Below are positions 13,194-33,966 of a stretch of DNA of 33,966 nucleotides, one piece after another. The DNA is taken from the NCBI GenBank assembly GCA_001179505.1, contig CDMY01000667.1, positions 1 through 33,966 on the forward strand. Direction: 5' to 3'. Position numbers and translations under genes: made by a program. The first letter of the stretch is position 1. Each line of letters begins with the position of its first letter. This stretch comes from Vitrella brassicaformis CCMP3155 (Eukaryota; Protista; Chromerida). Under the pieces are notes generated by a model. That model was not told the origin of the DNA. It saw nothing but the letters and a program-made list of their open reading frames with translations, and searched no databases.

Positions 13194-16100
13194 ATGCTGA
13201 CGACTTTCGGTCCTCCCAAGCAGTACTGCTTCGGCCACCGCGAGCCCATCCAGAGCCTCAGTGTGTCGCCATGCGGCCGCTACCTCGCCGCCATTTCCCC
13301 GTCGTCGGTGGCTCTGTGGAGCAACGAACAACACCGGGTGCTGCTGTCCTTCACCAAGCGCGAGACAACCCAGACGAGCGCCGACACGCAGTCGTCAAAA
13401 GCCGACATCTTCGGGTCTCATCACATGGCCGTGTGGTCGCCGTCTTCGTCTCACCTGTTCGTGTCGACGGTACCGGGCCGCAGCTTGTGCGTCTATCGCA
13501 TCTTGGCGACCCGCAGGGGCCATGAGGGAGAGGGGGATGAGTCGGAGGGGCTGCTGGATGCGGCGGATGAGACTACCCCCCGTTTCCAGTCGCGGCCGTA
13601 CATGGTGGTGCAGCAGCCGCCCACCCATTGCGGCACGCGCATCGAGCTGCACATGGTGCTCAATCTGCCCGTGTTGGTCAGCTGGATGGCCGCTAGCCCA
13701 CGCTATCTCATCGCCGCTTGCCGCAAGCAGCCAGCCATCTTCCTCCTGGACTACTCCGACTGTCGCTCTCTCAGCCACATCGTATACCTCACCCCATTCC
13801 TCACCGACACCGCCCTGGGCGCCACAACCCCACACCCACACCACGGTGGGCATCATGACCCCACTGTGGGCGGCACACCCACTCCTGCCGCCAACGTGAC
13901 GCCTTCCAGCACCACCCGGTCGGCCTTCAGGCCCTTTGACCCACCGGCGCACGGCGAGGCGCTGTATGATCCGGATGGCGCTGAGTGTCTCAAGAGGCAC
14001 CTGGAGAACGTCCAGCAGAGCCGCACCACACCCATGCTCAAGAGCGACGTCGAGGCGTACCCCCCGCCCTTCGGCTCGCCCCTCCCCTTCTCGACTGCAC
14101 CACCGCAGGCAGACCAGGACCACCCCCCCACCAATGGGTTGCCATCGCACCCCAAGGGCCATAGAAGGTCGTCTTACGGCGGTGAGGCCGTCGCGTCGCC
14201 ACCGACGGGCATCCACCACATCAGTGTCGACACGCGGCTGGACTTGGTGGGGGTGGTCCTCAACAGCGGGGCGGCGATGGTGTTTGCGTGGAAGAAGCCC
14301 TTCCTCTACCCAGGCAGGCGGCGAAACAATGACGACTGGCGAGCGGCGCTGCTCAGAGGGGGCAAGGGCGGGCTGGGTGTCATTGTGAGGGCTACTGGCG
14401 CCACTCAAATCGAGTTCAACGCCGCCCAGAACATGATGGCCGTGGCGCTCGCCAGCGGCGTGGTGGAATTGATCGACATTCCCAAACTGCGGGAGTGCAC
14501 CCTTGAGCGGGCGACGTCAGGGCGTGATACTACCCCGCCCCCCACGTCGTTGCCGGCGTATGTGGTGCGTCAGCTGAATGTGGCCGAGGCGATAGGGCTG
14601 GACGTGCAAGTGAGCGAGATGGGCGGCGTGGTGACCATGCAGTGGTCCAGTGACGGCAGGGCACTCGTGGTGGGCTATCGCAGGGTGGGATGGGCTATCT
14701 TCTCATACCTTGGTACAGACAGACAGACAGACAGGCAGACAGACAGACAATGAGAAGGACGCCTACAGCCAGGATTCCTGGGTGCTTATTTCGGTCCGTC
14801 TGTGTGTGTGCAGGCAAGCCCCTGGCGGCCCCGTTCCGCCGCCCCGAGGGCAAGGGCCCTTCGGCCCCCTTCCCCTCATCGCAGAGGGCTTCCCCAGCGT
14901 CCTACCTCCAATACACCCGGCGCACGTCGTACGCCTACTCGTTCCCGTATGGCTATGCCACTCCCGAACTGCAGCCCTCCCCGCCCCCGGCACATGCCAT
15001 GGGCACCCCCAGCGCGGCCGTCCTGCCGCCCCTCAGCCAGAGCGCATCGGCCACGCCCACTCACGGGGGCAGCGCATACCACCGGGCCATATCCACTCAG
15101 TCCATCCTGAGCAGCTGGTCGCGGGGCGTCCAGGGGCGCGCACTGTGCTGGGGCAGCCACGGCATGGCCGTCCTGGTGGCCTACCAGGGCGAGGACGGCG
15201 TCCTCTATGAGTTCGACATCTTCCGGAGCGCCGACTGGGCGCCACTCGTGTCACTGTCGCCGCAGGCGTTCGTCATTGGGCATGGGCAGCGGCAGAAGAG
15301 GGGGCTGGCGGAGGGGTGGAGCGCCAAGAGGACCTATGCACCCATCCCGCCGCAGTCGCTGTCTGGGGCATGCTGCTCTGCCGACCTCAACCACATGTGA
15401 GAACTTCACCACATAACGCTTGTTCTGCACGTACATCCATATGCGTGGATTTATTGTACTTGCACCGCATTGTGTTGTATGTACGTGTTGATATGAATGC
15501 AATGGATGCAGGGTGCTGGTCGGTCCCCACCGCTTCCTGGTGTGCGAGGCGCTGCCGTGGGAGCCGTCCCACCCCCAGTGGACGTCCATCCCCCTCCCAC
15601 CCGCACTGTACACCTGCCCCAACTGGCCCCTACAACTCGCCGCCATCAGCCCCGACGCTGACTGGTTCCTCGCCGCTGGCAGACGGGGCGCCGCGGTCTA
15701 CCACATGAAGACCAGAAGATGGCAGCTATTCGGCAATGTCCAGCACGAGGCCGCCCTCAAAACCATCGGCCTGGCCTGGTACGACTCCCGGACATTCTTC
15801 CTCACCTACGCGCAAGACTCGTCGACAGCCGCTGAGATGCAGCGGGGCGCGTCATCGGGCGACGTCAGCGCGCCGCAGACCCCGGCGGCCAACCCCCCCT
15901 CCCCATCTGCCACTGCCCCCGTGACGTACTCGATTGTCTTTCTAGACCCGTCGCTGCGTCTGGACCTGGACCTTGCAGTGGCCAAGATAGAGGACCTCCA
16001 CTACATGCCGCTGCGCGTGGCCCTGCTCGACCCCACACACCGACTGGTGCCCTCAATGAACCTCAGCAAACGCCTCGGCGGCGGGTCGGCGCGGCGGCAG

Positions 16101-22441: not shown

Positions 22442-24368
22442 ATGCGTCTTGTCGCTGTGGTCCTCGTTCTGATAGGCCTCTCGTCGGCGGAGTATCTATG
22501 TCCACCCCTTCCCCATGCAACCAACACCGGGCGCCCTCACAAGGCGTCCTTCCTGAGCACAGAGTGGGCCCTGCACCAGAACACCTTCACCTGCAACACA
22601 ACAGACGACGGTCAGGCACAACAGACTACCGTGAGTTTTCATGGCGGTCTGTCACCCGAGCAGGCGATGAGGCGTTTGTGCCCAAGACCGGCCTTTGCCG
22701 CAGCCAAGGTGCAGACACCGAAGCTCCCGCTCGCGTTTGTCTGACAAATAGCCCCCTTCTCGGAGCTGACGATGATGACGATTACCGACGCCTGAACTCG
22801 GCGACGGATAAGACCGCCTGCGAGAAACGTCGGTGCTGTTTCCAGAGGCGTCCAGTTGACAACGAGCAGTGTTTCTTCTCGCGTGAGAAACCAAATGACA
22901 GAAGTACTCGGGATTCCGATGCTTTCTCTCGATTTTCAGAGTGCCCGCCCTTTCTCCAGCAACAGAACAACAAGGGGCTGACGTATCCTCGAGACCTCGC
23001 CCTGACGTGTCCAGACAGGCATGATTTGTTTTCTCCACTGTGTACAATAATCCTTTGTGTGTGTGTTTGGCGCAATGTGAGGAAGGTGAAGGGCGGGTTT
23101 GTTGATCTACTGTCACCTCTCGTCAAGGTTCCCTTCTGGCGGGTGCCGAAATTCCCTTCTCGACCGCCACAGCCCATCAAAGACACGGGCGACAGACGAG
23201 TTATCCACTTCGGCCCCCATCTCAAGCGCCTGCCTGGATTCATCGACAAGAAGGAGGGGTCGGGGGGGTCTGATACCCGGTGTGACAGATCCCTAATCTC
23301 GGATGAGTTGACGTCTGGGACGAGTAATGAAGAGTTGGATGCAGTTGTAGTGCGATTTCCATGGCTTGTCAAAACCAAGGCGCGGCATCATTCCTTCTCC
23401 CAAACGATTCACGCTCGTAACAAGAAGGATGATGACGATGATCGTGACGATGACCGTGACGATGACCATAACCTTCGAGACTTGCGAGAGGTCTAATATA
23501 ACGTACCAAAGAGCTCAGATGTTCACCAGGTCTCATTATCTGATCAGGTCTTGAAGCATAAGTTGAGAGGCAAGAATTCCGCCAATACGTACGTTGTGGA
23601 CTTTGAGTGGGAGATATTCGTTCCGCCCCCACCACACAACACTCAGGAGGTGAGCTATACTAAACCAGTGGCGCTGACATCACGTCCTCTCGTTGTTTCG
23701 TCAGTTTGTGGATTCTGTGATCTTCGGTATTAATTATGGGGTTGAGAGGAAATACTGACTTGATATTCTGTGTGCTGCAGGGCTCAACGGCCGGGAGTGT
23801 TGCACAGGTGAGACAATTTTCTTCTGATGAAACTCTTTCGCATTTGTGTGTCGTTATCTTTTCTCAGGGACGTGTCCAACGACTGGGTTTTTTCCGCCTT
23901 TGGACGGATTCAGTGTATTCTACAAGGAGCTGTCTGCATCTGTTCCAGACCCCTACCCATCTGTCAATGTTGCTAAGTGCTGGTATGTCACCGAGAGCCC
24001 CATTTGACACAGATGTACTCATGGTCGGTCTCCCTTTGCGCAGCGAAGACTGGGACAGCTTCACATTCAACCAAGAGCAATATGGCAAGGGTCGCCGGTA
24101 AGAGTTTTCCGAACACAAACCCGCGATAATTTACTGTGTCTAGTCATTGTCATTGCCTCTGTCTGTATGTCCCCACGAAAGGTTTTTTTGGGTTGGCGTC
24201 ATTGGCAACAAGAGCGGAAAGGTGGAGGTCAGAGGCAGGGCGTACAAGCGTCGGTTCGACGAGGAGTCTATCTTCTTCTCCTGCTCGTCGTTCGGGGCTC
24301 CGGCCAACAATGCCACATGTCCGGCCTTTGAGGCGCCGCCAGATTTTAATCCGGACGATTTCAATTAA
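22442..24368 (+). CDS. Gene A: secreted Cys-rich protein with a trefoil (P-type)-like module, 10 exons
   Basis: Signal peptide MRLVAVVLVLIGLSSA. Exons 22442-22610, 22664-22882, 22940-23018, ~23082-23490, 23548-23649, 23705-23726, 23781-23807, 23868-23982, 24044-24097 and 24182-24368. The Cys pattern is C...RVC...C-x4-CCF-x9-CFF, with Asp-rich tracts. It is collinear with gene B throughout. Confidence 0.8.
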
Positions 24369-25996: not shown

Positions 25997-26064
25997 ACAG
26001 CCAGACAGCCAGACAGCCAGGCAGCCAGCCAGCCAGCCAGACAGACAGACAGAAAGACAGACAG
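25997..26064. repeat. Compound (GCCA)n/(GACA)n microsatellite
   Basis: CAGCCAGACAGCCAGACAGCCAGGCAGCCAGCCAGCCAGCCAGACAGACAGACAG... Confidence 0.9.
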
Positions 26065-26487: not shown

Positions 26488-28498
26488 ATGCATCTCGTGG
26501 CGGTGGTCCTCATCGGCCTCATAGGCCTCACGTCGGCGGCCGTCCCCTGCATGAACGCCACTATCCGCCGGCGCCTTTCGCGTCCCCATGGCTCCGCGGT
26601 GTCCTTCCTCGATTCATCGCATCAGAGCGGCCTCACTTTCAGCACAACAGATGGTGGGCCACACACGAAAGATGACCATATTTTCCTGCCCGTATCCTCT
26701 CACGCGAGCAGACGATGACGACACTCGCAAGCATCGGCGCGAATACGACCTGTGTAGCAAAGAAGGCACAGACACCCATCGAGTCTGTCTCACCGATTCC
26801 CCCCTCTATGGCGGCCATGATGACGATGACGATGACGATGACGGTTACCGCCTACGCACGAAAAAGTGGCCGCTACGCACGAAAAAGTGGCCGCTGAATT
26901 GGAGGGCTACGCAATTTTGCGAGGAGCGCGACTGCTGCTTCGAGGGGCATCCAGTCGACGGGGAGAGATGCTTCTTCTCGCGTGAGTAAATAGAGATGGG
27001 TCGAACACAACACACATCGCACACACGCACTTGCAGGGTGCCCGCCTTTTCTGGAGCAACAACACGTCAAAGGACTGACGGACCCTGAGGGTGTGACACT
27101 CACCTGTCCCGAGAGGCATGTATTTTGACGAATTGTCCTTTACAGACCATGCGCACGCGCGCGTGTGTGTGTATGTGTGTGTGTGTGGCGCACGCAGCGT
27201 GAGGAAGGTGAAGGGTGGGTTTCACGATTTACTGACGCCTTTGATCAAGAAGAGACATCCTCCGACACCCCCGGAGCCCATTACATATGACAAGGGCGAC
27301 TGGCGCACTATTCACTTCCATCCGAAGCTGAAGCGGCTGCCTGGGTACGTCAATAAGAATACCGAAGAGCTTGGCCACTACGGCAACTCAATATGTGGCA
27401 CCGATGGCACCGGTGGGTGGGTGGGTGAAGCGTGCCTGCAGAGACAGCACTATTTCATGACGGACCCGCTATTCTCCTTTGCAGATAGAACGTTTTCCAC
27501 GCACAATGACGACTTGGATGTGGTTGTGGTGCGAGTGGCCCAATTAGTGGAGACCAAACAAAGGCGTCGACGTCGTCATTATTACGCCCAAACGATCTCA
27601 AGCGACGACCATGACGACGATTACTATCGACACAAGGACCGTGATGACGACGACGATCACCGTCGACCCATTTTCGAGGTCTCTTCAAAAGAGGGTGTTC
27701 AGGTGTTCGGCCATAGTGCTATTTGTCTGTTTCCCAGGTTCACAAGAAGGATCTCCGCCCATATGGTCCTTATGTGATTGACTTCGAGGTGGAGATATAC
27801 GTCAACCGCAGCGACCCGTACAACGACCATGACGTGAGAAGCAGCGACGCAACTGGGCTTACGCGTGTATCTTTCCCTCTTCTCTGTCGTTGCTTTTTAG
27901 TTCGCTGACCACGTGACCTACGGTATGGTCTTGGCTACAGTGAGGTGGTTAGAAGGAGGTGAACCGTGTGCATTCGATTTGTGGTGCAGGGTGGAACAAC
28001 CAAGAGTGCTGTACAGGTACAGGTAGTGAACTCCCTTGCATTTGTTATGCGTTTCTTGTGCGTCTGACTCTTGTAACTAGGGAACTGCCCCGCAACAACA
28101 TACCTTCAGGGACAAGATGGCGGCAGTGTCTACTACCACAAGCTAGAAGCGGGGGTGATAGCAGGTGACTGGGCAACCGTCAATCTTGCCAGCTGCTGGT
28201 AAGCACATCGGTATTCCCCTCCACCGCTCGGCATGTCTCTTGCCTTGATCCTTGCAGCGAGGATTACAACAACTACAGATTCGTCCAGGACGAATATGGC
28301 AAGGCCGCGCTCTTTTTGTGGATCGGTGTGATTGGTAACAAGAAGGGCAGACTGGAGGTGCGCAGCAGGGCGTACAAGCGCATGGCCGACCAAAACAGCA
28401 TCTTTTTCGTTTGTTCAACGACCGCGCCTGCCGAGTGGGAAACCGGGCCCCCGTGCGCCGAGTTCAACCGATCAGCGATAGATTGGCCCCCGCATTAG
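26488..28498 (+). CDS. Gene B: tandem paralogue of gene A (secreted, trefoil-like, Asp/His-rich), 10 exons
   Basis: Signal peptide MHLVAVVLIGLIGLTSA. Exons 26488-26653, 26712-26981, 27037-27115, 27198-27412, 27485-27678, 27738-27833, 27901-27922, 27990-28016, 28081-28198 and 28258-28498. Blocks shared with A include CCF..PVD.E.CFFS.CPPFL, KVKGGF.DLL.PL, IHF.P.LKRLPG, ECCTG.CP, CCED, YGK...F.W.GVIGNK.G..EVR.RAYKR and SIFF.CS. Confidence 0.8.
26852..26895 (+). repeat. In-frame 21-bp tandem duplication (LRTKKWP x2)
   Basis: CTACGCACGAAAAAGTGGCCG x2 within exon 2 of gene B; absent from gene A. Confidence 0.9.
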
Positions 28499-28901
28499 GT
28501 CGGACGGCGTCCTACGGCTCATAGGTTTCAGGCACTGGCCCTCCCCCCCGATTCTTCTTTGTGTCTCGAGCTGCCCGCCCGAAGAGGGTGCCTGCCAATC
28601 GTGTTGTACTGTCTTACGGCTTGCGACCTTAGGAACAACTTTGTTGTTCTGAAAAAATGAGACGCGCGGGCGAGACACGAACACACAAAGAGATCTTGAA
28701 AAGTGGGCGTCTCGTAAAACTCCTAGGAACCCCGCCTCTAAAGGTTTTCTATTAGGCGTTTTGTCTCGGTCAATATGATCTTCACGCCGAGGGGACGCCA
28801 TCTGTTCCTCTCAGGATATTACTTAGTGAACATCTAAATCGGTCAATGCAAAGCAATGGACAAGCACGCGGGAACAAAGTAGAAAAAGTATTGAATCAAT
28901 T

Positions 28902-29073
28902 CACTGCATCAATGCGGACAACCCTCTTCGGTTGCTTCGCTTGGAAGACGGCCGTGGTCCTGGCCTAGCTGGCCACGAGTGTCTCAGATCACCCATACAT
29001 GGTCACCATAGCCGCCGACGGTTTGTCCGCCGGACAAACCGACGGGAGAGGGTACGTGTAAATGTATTTGTAC
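28902..29073 (+). repeat. Left terminal/subterminal arm of the outer element
   Basis: Inverted copy of 32557-32773: a 78-bp block at 79% identity, then ATGGTC..AGCCG, a palindrome, CGGGA(G)AGGG and an exact GTATTTGTAC (29064-29073). Confidence 0.8.
29015..29045. other. Palindrome/hairpin in the left arm
   Basis: CCG-A-CGGTTTGTCCG-C-CGGACAAACCG-A-CGG: an 11-bp perfect stem with a 1-nt centre, plus 3 bp beyond one mismatch. Confidence 0.9.
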
Positions 29074-29083
29074 ACGTTGCGAG

Positions 29084-29465
29084 GTTTTTCTGTTGCTGGA
29101 GAAAGGGCGGGCACTCTGAAAATCGAGAGAAAGCATCGGAATCCCGAGTACTTCTGTCATTTGGTTTCTCACGCGAGAAGAAACACTGCTCGTTGTCAAC
29201 TGGATGGCTCTGGAAACAGCACCGACGTTTCTCGCAGGCGGTCTCATCCGTCGCCGAGTTCAGGCGTCGGTAGTCGTCATCACCATCAGCTCCGAGAAGG
29301 GAGCTATTTGTCAGACAAACGCGAGCGGGAGCTTCGGTGTCTGCACCTTGGCTGCGGCAAAGGCCGGTCTTTGGCACCAACGCCTCATCCTATGCTCGGG
29401 TGAGAGACCGCCACATGGTAGTCTGTTGTGCCTGACCGTCGTCTGTTGTGTTGCAGGTGAAGGTG
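29084..29465 (-). pseudogene. Captured inverted fragment of gene A, part 1 (copy of 22582-22971)
   Basis: Hand alignment gives 15 substitutions over 382 nt plus an 8-nt intronic deletion (~96%). Both introns are retained. The intron-1 acceptor CAG|GC is changed to CATAG|GA, which would give TGA if used. There is no start codon or signal peptide. Confidence 0.95.
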
Positions 29466-32092
29466 AACACGTTATCACGTCTGGGTTCTTTCGTGTGATG
29501 TGACCATCCACCCCCTCCCCCTTTCCCCCACCCCCTGTCCACCCTGAGTGCCTCGTACGTACGGTTCGTCTGTGTGATATGGGGTCAGTTTGGGTGAGTT
29601 TTCACGATTTTTCTTCGATGTTGTGCCTTGGTCTGCTCCCGCTCCCTGTCTGTCACCGCATATCCCGAGACTAATAGCCGTTGCGGTTTGCTGCATGACG
29701 ATCCTCTCTACAGTGCCTCGTACGCCAACAGGCGACCGTTCGCACAGACTTCCTTTCGTGCAGCCTTTGACTTGATCGACGTATGAGCGGCTGTAAAGCA
29801 CGTCCACAGATAGATACACGTGAATCGGACTTTTTCTCAAGTGTCAGACTTGCGTGTCATATTATTTTCAACCATCAGACTTTTCATGTTTGCACAATGG
29901 ACACGAGGAGACGAGCCGGCTGAGCATTTATGGCTACAAATGGACAACTGCACTGGTGAGAACAAGAACCAGTACATATTCGCCTACGCCAGTCTACCTG
30001 TCCATCTTGGCGCCTTCAAAGAGGTGACTAGGCGTGCAGCACGCTTCCACATCGGTCGTCACGAACCATGGCCGCACTCTGTGCCTGCTGTGTGCAATGA
30101 CAGGTCACGGTGAACTTCTTACCTGTGGGCCACACGCACGAGGACATTGACCAGCTGCACTCTGTCACCTCCAAGACACTGAGAGGTACGCTGTCTGGCC
30201 TTTCTGGCGGACGCCAACACAGGTTGGTGTGTTGTGCTGTTGTGTTCTATATGTAGTTTCTCGATTTGCTACGGCAACTCAGCTGAGGGAGCTCATATTG
30301 GGTGCTCATCGCAATCCCAAGTACCCGAACGGTATGCAGGTGCGGTTCATGACGCAGACATGGGATTGGAAGGCATTGCTGGAGCCGCACACTGATCCCC
30401 CGGTCAATTTCTGCACGGCACAGTCGTATCGATTTGCACGGGTACGCCAAATCTGTATGTGCGCACACCGGACACACCCTGAGGCTCCATCGTGCACTGC
30501 ATGTGCTTGCTGCAGTTGCCCCCGTCATACGAGCACGTGGGCATGTACTTCAAGTCTCTCATAGCCGACAGAGATTGGAAAGGTATCTCACAATAGACAC
30601 GATATGCGCTGCCCACTGCCTTCCTCTGGCTCTGTGTTTGCTGCAGGTCCCCTTCCATTCATGAAGTCATATCCACCAGCCGGCAGCGGTGCGTCAGTCG
30701 CAGCAACAGAGGACCTCCTCAATCCAGGTGCCAACAGCAGGCGCGATCCTGATCGTATGAACAAGACTGTAAGCGAATCGGATGGCTACAGGGAAGAAAA
30801 GTGTACAGACTTGATGTCTTGGTAAATGATCATTACTGCAGATGTCCGCCACGTTGGCCGCGCTTGACAAGCTTCCCGATCAGCTTCGTTACAGAGACCA
30901 GACGCCTATGTTCACACGCGAGGATGTCAGCTTCTGCAAGGACTTGATCACGGGCAACTACGAGAAGGAGAACACCCCTTTCCGTCTGCCGGCCAAGATG
31001 CATGACTCATCATTTGCCGCTGACAGCCTGTTCACATCCACGGCAAGCGGACACAATGCACATAGTCAAAGGCCAATGGCAACAAATCATGTTCCCGCTT
31101 TCTGTCGTTGTCAGTCATCTTTGTACAAGATCGACAGTGGTGCCAGGACCATCGATTCTGGCATGTTGGCGTCAGTTTTCGACCGACTCGGACTCAAGTG
31201 CCAGTCAGTTTCTGTCGGAGATCCGACTGGCGTATCCACTGCTGATCAGCGCACACTGGCTATGTGGGAGAGCCGAGCAGAGGATCCGCAGAAAGGGGAC
31301 ATGGTTCTGATCGACCCAGGTAAGGAAGGAAAGACAGCCACACAAACAGGCAGACAGACAGACAGACAGACAGAAAGCACAGCTGTGTCCTGCGGATGTC
31401 TTCTCGTTTCACAGACCGCGAGGACATGGCGGATGGAGACGCAAGTCCGGCATGGGTCGGGCAATTCATTGAGGACGCCGAGTCAGCGGGTGATGGACTC
31501 CCTCTCGCGAGCATTTGGTGGTATGAGGGGAGAGGACCTCTCAATGGCTGGTCGCCAAAGGGACACTTTGAGCCGGCGATGCGCGTCGCGCCGTCAAAGT
31601 GAGTGAGCCACTGCAACGAATCGGATGTCTGGCATCCGATGTGGTTTGTGTGTGCGTTTGTATGTCATGCAGGTCAAAGCGTAGGAAACAGGTGACCGCT
31701 GAGCCGTGGCGTCAGTCAATCCCCAAAGGCAGCATACTGCTTGCTGGGTATCAGCTCACCAAGAACAATCGGCTACCTAGTGTTGTCAGAGAGTTTGTTT
31801 TTCGGCTGAGAGAGATGGAGGCGTTGAATGAGGAGAACCTGCCAGACGGCAAGGACGATTGTGTAGATTGTGTAGAGGAAGAGGATGCTGTATAGCTCCG
31901 TGTGTGTGGGTGGGTTGGTGGTGGGTGGGTGGGTATGTATGTGTGTGGGTTGTGAGTAAGGGAGACGGAGGGTTGATGAGATGGATGGATTGATAGACAC
32001 ACACATGGTGCATTCAATCGATTGGCGTGTCCATTATGCAAACAAGCAAGTCTGATACTTGAGAATTAGTCCAATTCACGTGATAACGTGTT
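29466..32092 (+). mobile_element. 2627-bp TIR DNA transposon, Sola-like, probably internally deleted
   Basis: Perfect 15-bp TIRs AACACGTTATCACGT (29466-29480) and ACGTGATAACGTGTT (32078-32092). The 4-bp TSD GGTG lies at 29462-29465 and 32093-32096. The empty site is the single CACC at 22582-22585 of gene A. Confidence 0.9.
29879..31895 (+). CDS. Spliced C-terminal half of a Sola-like / DUF7869-type DD(D/E) transposase (5' truncated)
   Basis: Phase-consistent exons give LWLQMDNCTGENKNQYIFAYASLPVHLGAFKEVTVNFLPVGHTHEDIDQLHS, QTWDWKALLEPH, YRFAR, VGMYFK...DWK, KGDMVLIDP..PAWVG..IWWY and EPWRQSIPKGSILLAGYQLTKNNRLP. Only ~400 bp lie between the left TIR and these exons. Confidence 0.8.
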
Positions 32093-32132
32093 GGTGTTCT
32101 GGTGCAGGCATTCTGTGCTCAGGAAGGACGCC
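32093..32132 (-). pseudogene. Captured inverted fragment of gene A, part 2 (copy of 22543-22585)
   Basis: The reverse complement GGCGTCCTTCCTGAGCACAGA-ATG-CCTGCACCAGAACACC matches gene A except for a 3-nt gap and one substitution. Confidence 0.95.
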
Positions 32133-32153
32133 GTTTCGTTTCGTAAAGGCTGA

Positions 32154-32172
32154 GACATGCGCTGCGCATGTC
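32154..32172. other. 19-nt palindrome
   Basis: GACATGCGC-T-GCGCATGTC, 21 bp from the end of the captured fragment. Confidence 0.85.
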
Positions 32173-32556
32173 AACGACGCATGGCTGAATCTGGTGTATA
32201 ACACAGACTCAAGACTGAAGAATGTGCGCAGCGTATCGCCGGCCGACCGAACGGGAGAAATCAAGACGACTCCACTGTGCTATTTTCGTTGGTCGGTCAA
32301 TGTCACAAAGTAAAGCATGTGTCTCCCGATGGATTGTCAACGAAAGCGGTTTGCATCGTCTCTTGCTTGCCTCATCCTTTCCTTCACACGATCATGCCGT
32401 GGTGCAACAGAAATGTTTGAGCTTGGAATGTGCGTGTTGGACGTGTGTAGTGGGAGACATCTTACAACCAATGTTCTTGTGTTTAGCCAGCATGGGATGC
32501 TCCATGAACTTTTCCAAGACACACTCATGATGTGCTCTGGAATGAAAGTAATGAAA

Positions 32557-32773
32557 GTACAAATACCGCCCTTCCCGCCCCAATGTCGGTTCGACAGGCT
32601 GTCGGGCCGACATTGGGGCGGGCCATCCATTGCCTCACTCAAAGGTCGGCTGGATGGACCATACATAGGTGTAATGACCTACGACCCACCCTCATCTCGT
32701 GGCCAGCCTGGCCAGGATTACGGCCATCTCTCGCGGGAAGCAACATAGGAGGGTTGTCTGTAGTGATGCAGTG
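32557..32773 (-). repeat. Right terminal/subterminal arm of the outer element
   Basis: Inverted counterpart of 28902-29073; contains a 49-nt palindrome and TGGCCAG-C-CTGGCCA (32700-32714). Confidence 0.8.
32574..32622. other. 49-nt near-perfect palindrome/hairpin in the right arm
   Basis: CCCGCCCCAATGTCGG-TT-CGACAG-G-CTGTCG-GG-CCGACATTGGGGCGGG: 16 + 6 Watson-Crick pairs, 2 T:G pairs and a 1-nt centre. Confidence 0.95.
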
Positions 32774-33966
32774 ATTAGCTGAATCAATGAATGAATTGAA
32801 TGACAATGACCCATCATTGATTGACTCATTGCTTGACTGACAAGCACACACTCGTGTGACTCGACTGGCGCCGCATCACTGCAGAATGGCAAGGTGATCC
32901 GTTCGTTTCTTGCAGCCGGCCGATCAAATCCCATTGCAAACTTACTATCCTGACACTCATATGAGAACACAAAACAGCAGCAGAGTTACCATACGAGCGC
33001 ACGCAGAAGTCCGTTTCTAATGAGAGCGAATTACGTCATTGACCCAGGTTTTTTGCGGCAAAATTAAAACCATTGTGACATAAACATTGCTGCACTCACC
33101 ACGAGAGTGCCTCGTGGGGCTGTGGCATGTGGTAATTGTGGGATGTCTAGATTCATCATACCGGTGAAGACGAGTAAAGTTGCCGGCCCAAGCTGATACG
33201 GTTGCGGCCTCAGTGAGGGGTGACTCCGCCTCGAGGCCTCGAACACATTCAGCAGTTCCTCATCTACAACCCTCCCTTTCAAGGCGAGGCCCCCCGGTGG
33301 CCATGAGATCATCATGGAATGGTGGTGGTGGTGGTTAAGGGTAAGATTTATGGAATGGTGTGTCAGCAAGTCACCTTCGTCCGACTCGCCCGCTTCATGT
33401 ATTCTACTTAAGCACTCCCTTGTTGTTGTGGTGATTTTGTGGCAATTGTGTTCAGCCGGACTCAGAGGAACAGTCTATGTCCCTTGTGCATGATCCGTGA
33501 CGGTGGCCCTTTGGCGAGCATGATGGTGATCCAGGGACACGGCAGATCGGGTCTCTGGTACAATGCAAAGAACAAGAGCGAGATATGCGGTTTCAAGATG
33601 ACTACGAGGCATCACATCTCTCTGAGCAGACGTGTCTCGTGAGAAACCAGCTAAATTCCCTCTTCTCTCGAGTGGGAGAATCTTACCTCGGATTTCACTG
33701 TATAAGCCACGTCAGACATGCACACGTTCCGGACAAAAGTGTTGATTGCGTTTCGGCGTGGAGTTTGAAGGCTCTTGGTTGGTTGAAGCTTTCTTTTGTG
33801 TCCCAACAATCGAGGCTAGATTGGGGCAAATGTCTTGTCAGAATGATATCTCGCGGCGATCAGGGGGAGCCCAGTTGTGTATGTTAGTACGCGTGTGCGA
33901 AATGCTGCCTGCGGTAGATGGATGTCGTCTGAGAGAGAGGCGGACCCCATGGATCCGAGATGCACC

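What the first reader, a model, noticed from the sequence alone, without database searches (positions are those of the whole stretch)
29462..32096. Sola-like transposon with atypical AACACG termini and a proven 4-bp GC-rich target duplication
Seen: perfect 15-bp TIRs and a GGTG TSD. The pre-insertion site can be read directly in gene A, which fixes both ends to the base. The transposase carries LQMDNC.GENKN and FLPVGHTHEDIDQ. Known: Sola elements make 4-bp TSDs and have DNC..QNKN and GH....D motifs; described groups favour AT-rich or TTAA targets, and Sola2/3 have G-R-G ends. Inference: this defines the ends for a GHTHEDID/DUF7869-type lineage that is often annotated only as hypothetical protein, and may be a distinct Sola clade.
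Basis: partly seen in the sequence, partly recalled or inferred. Interest (0 to 1): 0.8.

Follow-up and report, generated by a model that had tools for sequence, protein, structure and literature searches.

The report
Truncated Sola1 transposon in Vitrella
This is a real, precisely bounded cut-and-paste transposon in the alga Vitrella brassicaformis, but it is a broken copy of the already described Sola1 group, not a new kind, so it is a useful annotation and not a surprise.

Summary
Window 29466-32092 is bounded by perfect 15-bp inverted repeats (AACACGTTATCACGT). It is flanked by a GGTG duplication. An inverted paralogue (gene A, 22582-22585) carries the uninterrupted site with one GGTG, so the duplication is exactly 4 bp.

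The element's gene is the public 450-aa protein of Vitrella brassicaformis CCMP3155, filed as "DUF7869 domain-containing". It has the motifs MDNCTGENKN and VGHTHEDIDQ.

Pieces of three published Sola1 transposases match Pfam DUF7869 in the same register as this protein: Sola1-1_AP, an aphid protein, and Ectocarpus Sola1-1_Ec32. The Ectocarpus piece scores 80.5 bits (E 1.5e-22). Sola2 and Sola3 pieces do not match.

Sola1-1_Ec32 is on record with AACCG...CGGTT termini and a 4-bp duplication that is not AWWT. So neither "distinct clade" nor "atypical termini" is supported.

The copy is non-autonomous. The N-terminal half, with the first catalytic aspartate, is missing. The interior is single-copy, while the ends are about 4-8 times deeper in read contigs. 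The left end carries an extra 336 bp. The whole element sits inside a captured gene fragment within a CACTA-like element.

Other readers of this scan noted the same stretch (s1-233259, s1-233342), and one noted another Sola-like element elsewhere in this genome (s1-202007).

Verdict: a new member of a known kind, of low-to-moderate interest.

The parts
29462..29465 (+). Left copy of the 4-bp target-site duplication, GGTG
29466..29480 (+). Left terminal inverted repeat, AACACGTTATCACGT
   Evidence: 15/15 complementary to 32078-32092; 0.04 matches expected by chance.
29481..29816 (+). 336 bp present only at the left end, flanked on both sides by CACGT (29476-29480 and 29817-29821). It has no inverted repeats of its own and no Pfam match. 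It is either an insertion into the left repeat or left-end sequence followed by a copy of the right end.
   Evidence: Read contigs show about two genomic copies; the second has a 42-bp gap (29663-29704) and runs on to 29903.
29817..29905 (+). Left subterminal repeat. It matches the reverse complement of 32026-32082 at 83-88% identity, with a short internal duplication.
   Evidence: Contig depth here is about 4 times the single-copy level.
29940..31895 (+). 5'-truncated Sola1-type (DUF7869) transposase gene, equal to public protein P0003 (450 aa). Exons: 29940-30023, 30104-30185, 30257-30441, 30516-30582, 30647-30768, 30842-31042, 31115-31319, 31415-31598, 31673-31895. All introns are GT-AG except 31043-31114, which is GC-AG.
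   Evidence: Exon phases and splice sites. P0003 is identical to the exon translations. Pfam DUF7869 E 1.6e-27, profile positions 65-177 of 192. The N-terminal half and first-aspartate block of full-length relatives are absent.
31178..31840 (+). Coding region for the C-terminal beta-barrel module (P0003 residues 293-432, approximate DNA span). It is shared with full-length relatives.
   Evidence: Alignments A3 and A4. AF2 model pLDDT 77.5. Best structural matches are chromo-barrel and BAH domains, Z up to 7.8; suggestive only.
32026..32077 (-). Right subterminal repeat, contiguous with the terminal 15 bp
   Evidence: Contig depth is about 7 times the single-copy level.
32078..32092 (-). Right terminal inverted repeat
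32093..32096 (+). Right copy of the target-site duplication, GGTG
22582..22585 (-). Uninterrupted target site (CACC on the + strand) in the first coding exon of gene A, the source of the captured fragment
29084..29465 (-). Captured, inverted fragment of gene A (left part). It continues at 32093-32132 on the other side of the element.
   Evidence: 94% identity to 22582-22971.
28902..32773 (.). Outer CACTA-like non-autonomous element. It has CACTGCATCA... inverted repeats of about 80 bp and a 3-bp duplication ATT at 28899-28901 and 32774-32776. It holds the gene fragment and the Sola1 element.
   Evidence: Contig depth at its ends is about 15 times the single-copy level.

Best explanation
Window 29466-32092 is a non-autonomous, internally deleted copy of a Sola1-superfamily DNA transposon of Vitrella brassicaformis.

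Shown: a Sola1-type DDD transposase, supplied in trans by a full-length copy that is now lost or not seen, cut the element at its AACACG... ends. It pasted the element into a GGTG site inside a gene-A fragment already captured by a CACTA-like element. Staggered cutting and repair duplicated the 4 bp.

Shown: the copy keeps both ends and the 3' two thirds of the transposase gene. That part holds the second aspartate (DNC..ENKN), the third (GHTHEDID) and a C-terminal barrel module. It has lost the N-terminal C..C region and the first catalytic aspartate (the IIDGxDQsK block of relatives), so its product cannot catalyse transposition.

Inferred: trans-mobilisation by an autonomous partner; deletion by abortive gap repair; and the origin of the 336 extra bp at the left end.
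For: - Ends and duplication.
- Public gene model and organism.
- Family: DUF7869 E 1.6e-27 for P0003. Published Sola1 pieces hit the same profile in register. hhalign of the family alignment against Sola1-1_AP gives 93% probability, E 3e-7, against 1.5% for Sola2 and 0.07% for Sola3. BLASTP to Sola1-1_Ec32 gives 40% over 55 residues, E 3e-12.
- Published Sola1-1_Ec32 has AACCG-CGGTT termini and a 4-bp duplication.
- Truncation: Pfam profile positions 1-64 are absent from P0003 (1-46 in the exon-1 reading). Full-length relatives have 130-420 more N-terminal residues including the first-aspartate block. tblastn finds nothing upstream of 29859.
- Copy number: the interior is at single-contig depth, the ends are 4-8 times deeper.
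- Invariant residues in the family alignment are D, N, NKN, GHTH and D, as expected of a DDD core.
Against: - Only one insertion is seen, so target preference and the generality of the 4-bp length rest on n = 1.
- No autonomous partner was found. The next-best protein in 5.8 billion is 48% identical over 23% of the length.
- The left end is irregular: 336 extra bp sit between the terminal 15 bp and the subterminal repeat.
- The transposase remnant could in principle be a passenger in an unrelated 4-bp-duplication element.
Confidence: 0.85

Rival explanations
1. The element belongs to a separate, undescribed Sola clade with its own termini and a GC-rich target preference.
For: The duplication GGTG departs from the AWWT/AWDT preference called a Sola1 hallmark in insects (PMC3845634). 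Insect Sola1 pieces score only 21-23 bits on DUF7869, so Sola1 has deep internal branches. The C-terminal 330 residues have almost no detectable relatives.
Against: Curated Sola1-1_Ec32 (best BLASTP hit Repbase Sola1-1_PPa) scores 80.5 bits on DUF7869. It shares the DN..ENKN / VGHTH..IDQ layout, AAC-type termini and a non-AWWT 4-bp duplication. Target preference cannot be inferred from one insertion.
Confidence: 0.1
2. The inverted repeats belong to an unrelated transposon that makes 4-bp duplications, and the DUF7869 gene fragment is captured cargo. This would resemble the gene-A fragment inside the outer CACTA-like element.
For: Gene capture clearly happens at this locus. The interior is single-copy while the ends are repeated. 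The gene lacks its 5' half.
Against: The gene runs parallel to the element and stops 197 bp before the right end, the usual layout of a deletion derivative. The 4-bp duplication and AAC-type termini both fit a published Sola1. No other transposase is present.
Confidence: 0.05

Closest known systems
Sola1-1_Ec32 of Ectocarpus (curated DNA/Sola-1; PMC12477816, supplementary files 2 and 3)
   Same: Both have a 4-bp target duplication and termini starting AAC (AACCG there, AACACG here). Both have long imperfect inverted repeats. The transposases share the DN..ENKN.Y and (M/P)VGHTH..IDQ motifs. Both match Pfam DUF7869, and they are 40% identical over the 55-residue core.
   Different: The Ectocarpus element is 21.5 kb, autonomous, has 282-bp repeats and carries an accessory gene. 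Its duplications tend to end in A. The Vitrella copy is 2.6 kb, has lost the N-terminal half, and sits at GGTG. The quoted Ectocarpus protein ends without the C-terminal barrel segment seen here (read by eye).
Insect Sola1 (Sola1-1_AP; Sola1_NA MITEs of Bombyx and Rhodnius; PMC3845634; PMC3985635 supplement)
   Same: Both have a 4-bp duplication, inverted repeats, and the D-N-C-x-G-x-N-(K/R)-N and G-H-(T/S) motifs in the same order. hhalign probability is 93%.
   Different: The insect elements prefer AWWT/AWDT targets and start GGACCGTTTATT.... Their core is much further from the DUF7869 profile (21-23 bits against 72-97 bits here).
Sola2 and Sola3
   Same: They also make 4-bp duplications (own knowledge of Bao et al. 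2009, which is not held in the library). They have a D-(G/N)-x-x-x-x-x-(K/G)-N stretch after the second aspartate.
   Different: There is no Pfam DUF7869 match. hhalign probabilities are 1.5% and 0.07%.

Membership tests
Sola1 (Sola superfamily) | 4-bp target-site duplication | tested here: met
   GGTG lies on both sides, with a single copy in the uninterrupted paralogous site. The flank matches overlap by exactly 4 bp.
Sola1 (Sola superfamily) | Terminal inverted repeats | tested here: met
   15/15 perfect, continuing to about 67-89 bp at 83-88% identity.
Sola1 (Sola superfamily) | Transposase homologous to reference Sola1 transposases | tested here: met
   Pieces of Sola1-1_AP, aphid XP_003249065 and Sola1-1_Ec32 hit the same Pfam profile (DUF7869) in register: E 8.1e-5, 2.4e-4 and 1.5e-22. 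hhalign probability is 93%. BLASTP to the Ec32 piece gives E 3e-12. Only published pieces were used, not full Repbase sequences.
Sola1 (Sola superfamily) | Complete DDD catalytic triad (needed for an autonomous element) | tested here: not met
   The second and third acidic residues are present (D of DNC, D of EDID; both invariant in A3). The first-aspartate block (IIDGxDQsK in relatives) and everything N-terminal are absent. The copy is a member by descent but is non-autonomous.
Sola1 (Sola superfamily) | AWWT target preference (called a hallmark for insect Sola1) | tested here: inconclusive
   The single insertion is at GGTG, which does not fit AWWT, but one site cannot measure a preference. 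Curated algal Sola1-1_Ec32 also departs from AWWT.
Sola2 / Sola3 | Transposase homologous to Sola2-1_HM or Sola3-1_HM | tested here: not met
   No DUF7869 hit for their core pieces. hhalign probabilities are 1.5% and 0.07%.
BAH / chromo-barrel (Royal family) reader domains, for the C-terminal module only | Fold match clearly above background, and an aromatic cage | tested here: inconclusive
   Foldseek's top hits are nearly all BAH domains, but at E 0.03-0.2 and TM 0.35-0.40. VIA-align gives Z 7.8 for the MRG15 chromo-barrel and 6-7 for BAH domains, below the tool's caution line of 8. Pfam calls no BAH or chromo domain. Cage residues were not examined.

The most novel reading that the evidence does not exclude
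A branch of Sola1 transposases (this one, P0021, P0050, P0044 and others) carries a C-terminal chromo-barrel/BAH-like histone-reader module that tethers integration to a chromatin state. The intact, spliced, single-copy Vitrella remnant keeps that module and two of the three catalytic residues but has no DNA-binding N-terminus. It might be expressed as a truncated protein that interferes with, or regulates, its family, and not be mere debris.
Probability: 0.1. Interest if true: 0.5.

Novelty: new member of a known kind. Interest (0 to 1): 0.27.

Why it matters
- It gives base-exact ends and duplication length for a Sola1 family in a chromerid alga, a close photosynthetic relative of apicomplexan parasites. 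I found no paper that names Sola elements in Vitrella.
- It shows that Pfam's "domain of unknown function" DUF7869 is the catalytic core of Sola1-type transposases. That would let thousands of "hypothetical" or "DUF7869 domain-containing" proteins be annotated as transposase-derived.
- It adds one more case, besides Ectocarpus, of an algal Sola1 with AAC-type termini and a target that is not AWWT.
- None of this changes how Sola elements are thought to work.

Tried and rejected
- Word search with stop-free pieces of the gene found nothing. I used the 97-aa ORF 29820-30110 and the 254-aa ORF 30842-31603. The tool's length window excludes the 450-aa model and full-length relatives.
- ESM Atlas on exon 6 gave no usable hit.
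- A viral-contig scan with exon 6 found no relative.
- A metagenome scan for the 19-mer end AACACGTTATCACGTGAAT gave two hits. Both lie inside a bacterial coding sequence and are chance matches.
- I scanned seven fetched loci (L003-L009, the loci of six relatives: P0044, P0071, P0081, P0021, P0022, P0007) for inverted repeats with duplications. I found no convincing ends; the contigs are too short or end near the gene.
- Bao et al. 2009 and Yuan & Wessler 2011 are not held in the library. Statements about them rest on citing papers or on my own knowledge.
- I looked for a Helitron, solo-LTR or MITE origin for the 336-bp left-end segment. It has no matching termini, no inverted repeats and no Pfam hit.
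- A profile search of solved structures with the family alignment returned only a Nipped-B-like protein, E 4.5e-6, over the C-terminal profile positions. It may be compositional; I did not examine it.

Full report
**What is in the sequence.**
The window holds a 2,627-bp unit, 29466-32092. Its outermost 15 bp on each side are perfect reverse complements (AACACGTTATCACGT). The 15-mer has no other match in 34 kb even with two mismatches allowed; 0.04 are expected by chance. GGTG stands directly outside both ends.

The left flank, 29084-29465, is 94% identical to 22971..22582 on the opposite strand. The right flank, 32093-32132, continues at 22585..22543. The two matches overlap by exactly four bases, and the three-way alignment shows one GGTG in the uninterrupted copy. 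The bases next to the two GGTG copies differ, so the duplication is 4 bp with no ambiguity.

The uninterrupted site lies in the first coding exon of "gene A", which starts at ATG 22442 with a signal-peptide-like start. It is therefore a paralogous empty site, not an allelic one. A read-contig joint 29465->32112 carries gene A's own letters and is that paralogue too.

**Context.**
The gene-A fragment itself sits inside a larger element, 28902-32773. That element has roughly 80-bp inverted repeats beginning CACTGCATCA and a 3-bp ATT duplication, so it is a CACTA-like non-autonomous element. Contig depth at its ends is about 15 times the single-copy level. Earlier notes of this scan on the same stretch said as much, and I confirmed both points.

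**Fine structure of the ends.**
The right end is contiguous for at least 67 bp. Its reverse complement equals the left terminal 15 bp followed by 29817-29905 at 83-88% identity. On the left, 336 extra bp (29481-29816) lie between the two parts, bracketed by CACGT on both sides. This segment has no inverted repeats, no coding similarity and no other copy in the window.

Read contigs show about two genomic copies of the segment. The second has a 42-bp gap and runs on into the subterminal repeat. I see two possibilities and cannot choose between them without other copies. It may be an insertion into the left repeat. Or it may be genuine left-end sequence followed by an inverted copy of the right end, laid down during repair.

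**The gene.**
Eight exons with compatible phases give an open frame from 29922 to a stop at 31895.
- Exons 1, 2 and 3 hit Pfam DUF7869 at profile positions 47-92, 93-119 and 124-175.
- The exhaustive protein search with exon 1 returned P0003, a 450-aa database protein identical to the exon translations.
- The word search names P0003 "unnamed protein product [Vitrella brassicaformis CCMP3155]" / "DUF7869 domain-containing protein", on a 33,966-bp contig, which is this window. That settles the organism.

P0003 starts at the M of MDNC. It also removes one more intron, 31043-31114 (GC-AG, 72 nt). P0003 scores E 1.6e-27 on DUF7869, at profile positions 65-177 of 192.

**It is truncated.**
Full-length relatives are P0021, P0022, P0007, P0050, P0044 (the ostracod Darwinula), P0038 (a bacterial MAG) and P0040. 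They cover DUF7869 positions 1-190. Upstream they carry a C..C motif, a helical stretch and a block reading s-I-I-i-D-G-m-D-Q-s-K-..-l-P-H-F. This block is the counterpart of the first-aspartate strand of Sola1-1_AP (VAVFDLEKVL).

P0003 begins only at the second aspartate. Only about 10 codons separate the end of the left repeat (29905) from LQMDNC. tblastn of eleven proteins (P0003 and ten relatives) against the window finds nothing upstream of 29859.

The invariant columns of the family alignment are D, N, N-K-N, G-H-T-H and D, which fits a DDD core. With the first aspartate and the presumed DNA-binding N-terminus gone, this copy cannot move itself.

**Copy number.**
In contigs of three runs of the organism or close kin, the interior (30033-31265) is covered by one contig at the depth of the unique flanks. 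The subterminal regions are 4-8 times deeper. So the ends belong to a small family of mostly non-coding relatives, and the coding part is unique. No close paralogue exists among 5.8 billion proteins: the next hit is 48% identical over 23% of the length.

**Which family.**
The supplement of Majorek et al. 2014 (PMC3985635) gives the core rows of Sola1-1_AP, Sola2-1_HM and Sola3-1_HM.
- The Sola1-1_AP piece hits DUF7869 at E 8.1e-5, in the same register as the window's exons. The aphid Sola1 piece hits at E 2.4e-4. The Sola2 and Sola3 pieces do not hit.
- hhalign of the family alignment A3 gives 93% probability (E 3e-7) for Sola1, 1.5% for Sola2 and 0.07% for Sola3.

The curated Ectocarpus library (PMC12477816) settles it. 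[quoted passage not shown] Its transposase reads ...MMDGANQSNF...VQVDNTVAENKNNYL...CFMMVGHTHIQIDQIFS. An 86-residue piece of it scores 80.5 bits on DUF7869 (E 1.5e-22, cut-off 26) and aligns to P0003 at 40% identity over 55 residues, E 3e-12.

The "GHTHEDID/DUF7869 lineage" is therefore published Sola1. AAC-type termini and a non-AWWT 4-bp duplication are already on record for an algal member. The AWWT "hallmark" comes from insect elements (PMC3845634), whose cores are much further from the DUF7869 profile.

**Mechanism.**
- Shown: ends, duplication, homology and truncation.
- From established knowledge of DDE/DDD cut-and-paste elements: the transposase binds the inverted repeats, excises the element and inserts it with 4-bp staggered cuts that repair into the duplication.
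- Inferred: this copy was moved in trans by an autonomous relative. It lost its 5' half by incomplete gap repair, either before or after arriving here.

**Side observation.**
The last ~140 residues of P0003 are shared with full-length relatives (A4). They fold with fair confidence (pLDDT 77.5, pTM 0.69) into a small beta-barrel plus a helix. Foldseek's best PDB matches are almost all BAH domains, but weak (E 0.03-0.2). VIA-align puts the MRG15 and MSL3 chromo-barrels at Z 7.4-7.8 and BAH domains at Z 6-7, below the tool's caution line of 8. Pfam calls nothing there. A chromatin-reader module in a Sola1 branch is a lead, not a finding.

**Limits.**
- One insertion only.
- No access to the rest of the genome.
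- No Repbase sequences, so no tree.
- Bao et al. 2009 could not be read.
- The short peptide pieces compared (67-86 residues) were copied from the two papers' supplements.

**Verdict.**
This is a new member of a known kind, and its interest is low to moderate.

Noticed in passing
window 28902-32773 (duplication ATT at 28899-28901 and 32774-32776): An outer CACTA-like non-autonomous element with roughly 80-bp inverted repeats (CACTGCATCA...). It holds an inverted 94%-identical fragment of neighbouring gene A. Contig depth at its ends is about 15 times the single-copy level.
   Followed up: partly
window 29481-29816: A 336-bp segment at the left end only, bracketed by CACGT. A second genomic copy with a 42-bp gap (29663-29704) continues into the subterminal repeat. 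Its origin is unexplained.
   Followed up: partly
window about 31178-31840 (P0003:293-432); alignment A4: A C-terminal beta-barrel module shared by a branch of DUF7869/Sola1 transposases. Its best structural matches are chromo-barrel (MRG15, MSL3) and BAH domains, at sub-threshold scores.
   Followed up: partly
window 31043-31114: The public gene model removes a 72-nt GC-AG intron inside what otherwise reads as one open exon. Either form keeps the frame.
   Followed up: no
window 29459-29465 and 32093-32099; also 22579-22588: The target reads GAA|GGTG|TTC, so the three bases on each side of the duplicated GGTG are reverse complements of each other. This is one case, with a chance of about 1 in 64.
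   Followed up: no
window 22442-24100 and 26900-28300: Tandem paralogues about 4.1 kb apart (74-76% identical blocks). They have a signal-peptide-like start and a Cys-rich motif, CEKRRCCF...EQCFFS. The first exon has no Pfam match.
   Followed up: no
L008:1-4412 and protein P0038: DUF7869 proteins appear on prokaryote-looking DNA. P0022 lies next to CheC and CheD genes on a metagenome contig, and P0038 is filed under a Vulcanimicrobiaceae MAG. P0022's serine-rich N-terminus looks eukaryotic, so the contig may be chimeric.
   Followed up: no
L004:1000-7226: A metagenome contig with a 750-aa DUF7869 gene has the same 40-70-bp palindromic repeat (CACAGATCTGTG core) in several intergenic spaces.
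   Followed up: no
window 29741-30034, 31046-31204, 31451-31897: Marine-sediment metagenome runs (X13-X17) hold parts of the element, some without any difference. So Vitrella or close kin occur in those samples.
   Followed up: no
window 31340-31378; also 14717-14750 and 26019-26060: (GACA)n / (CAGA)n microsatellites recur in introns and spacers across the window.
   Followed up: no
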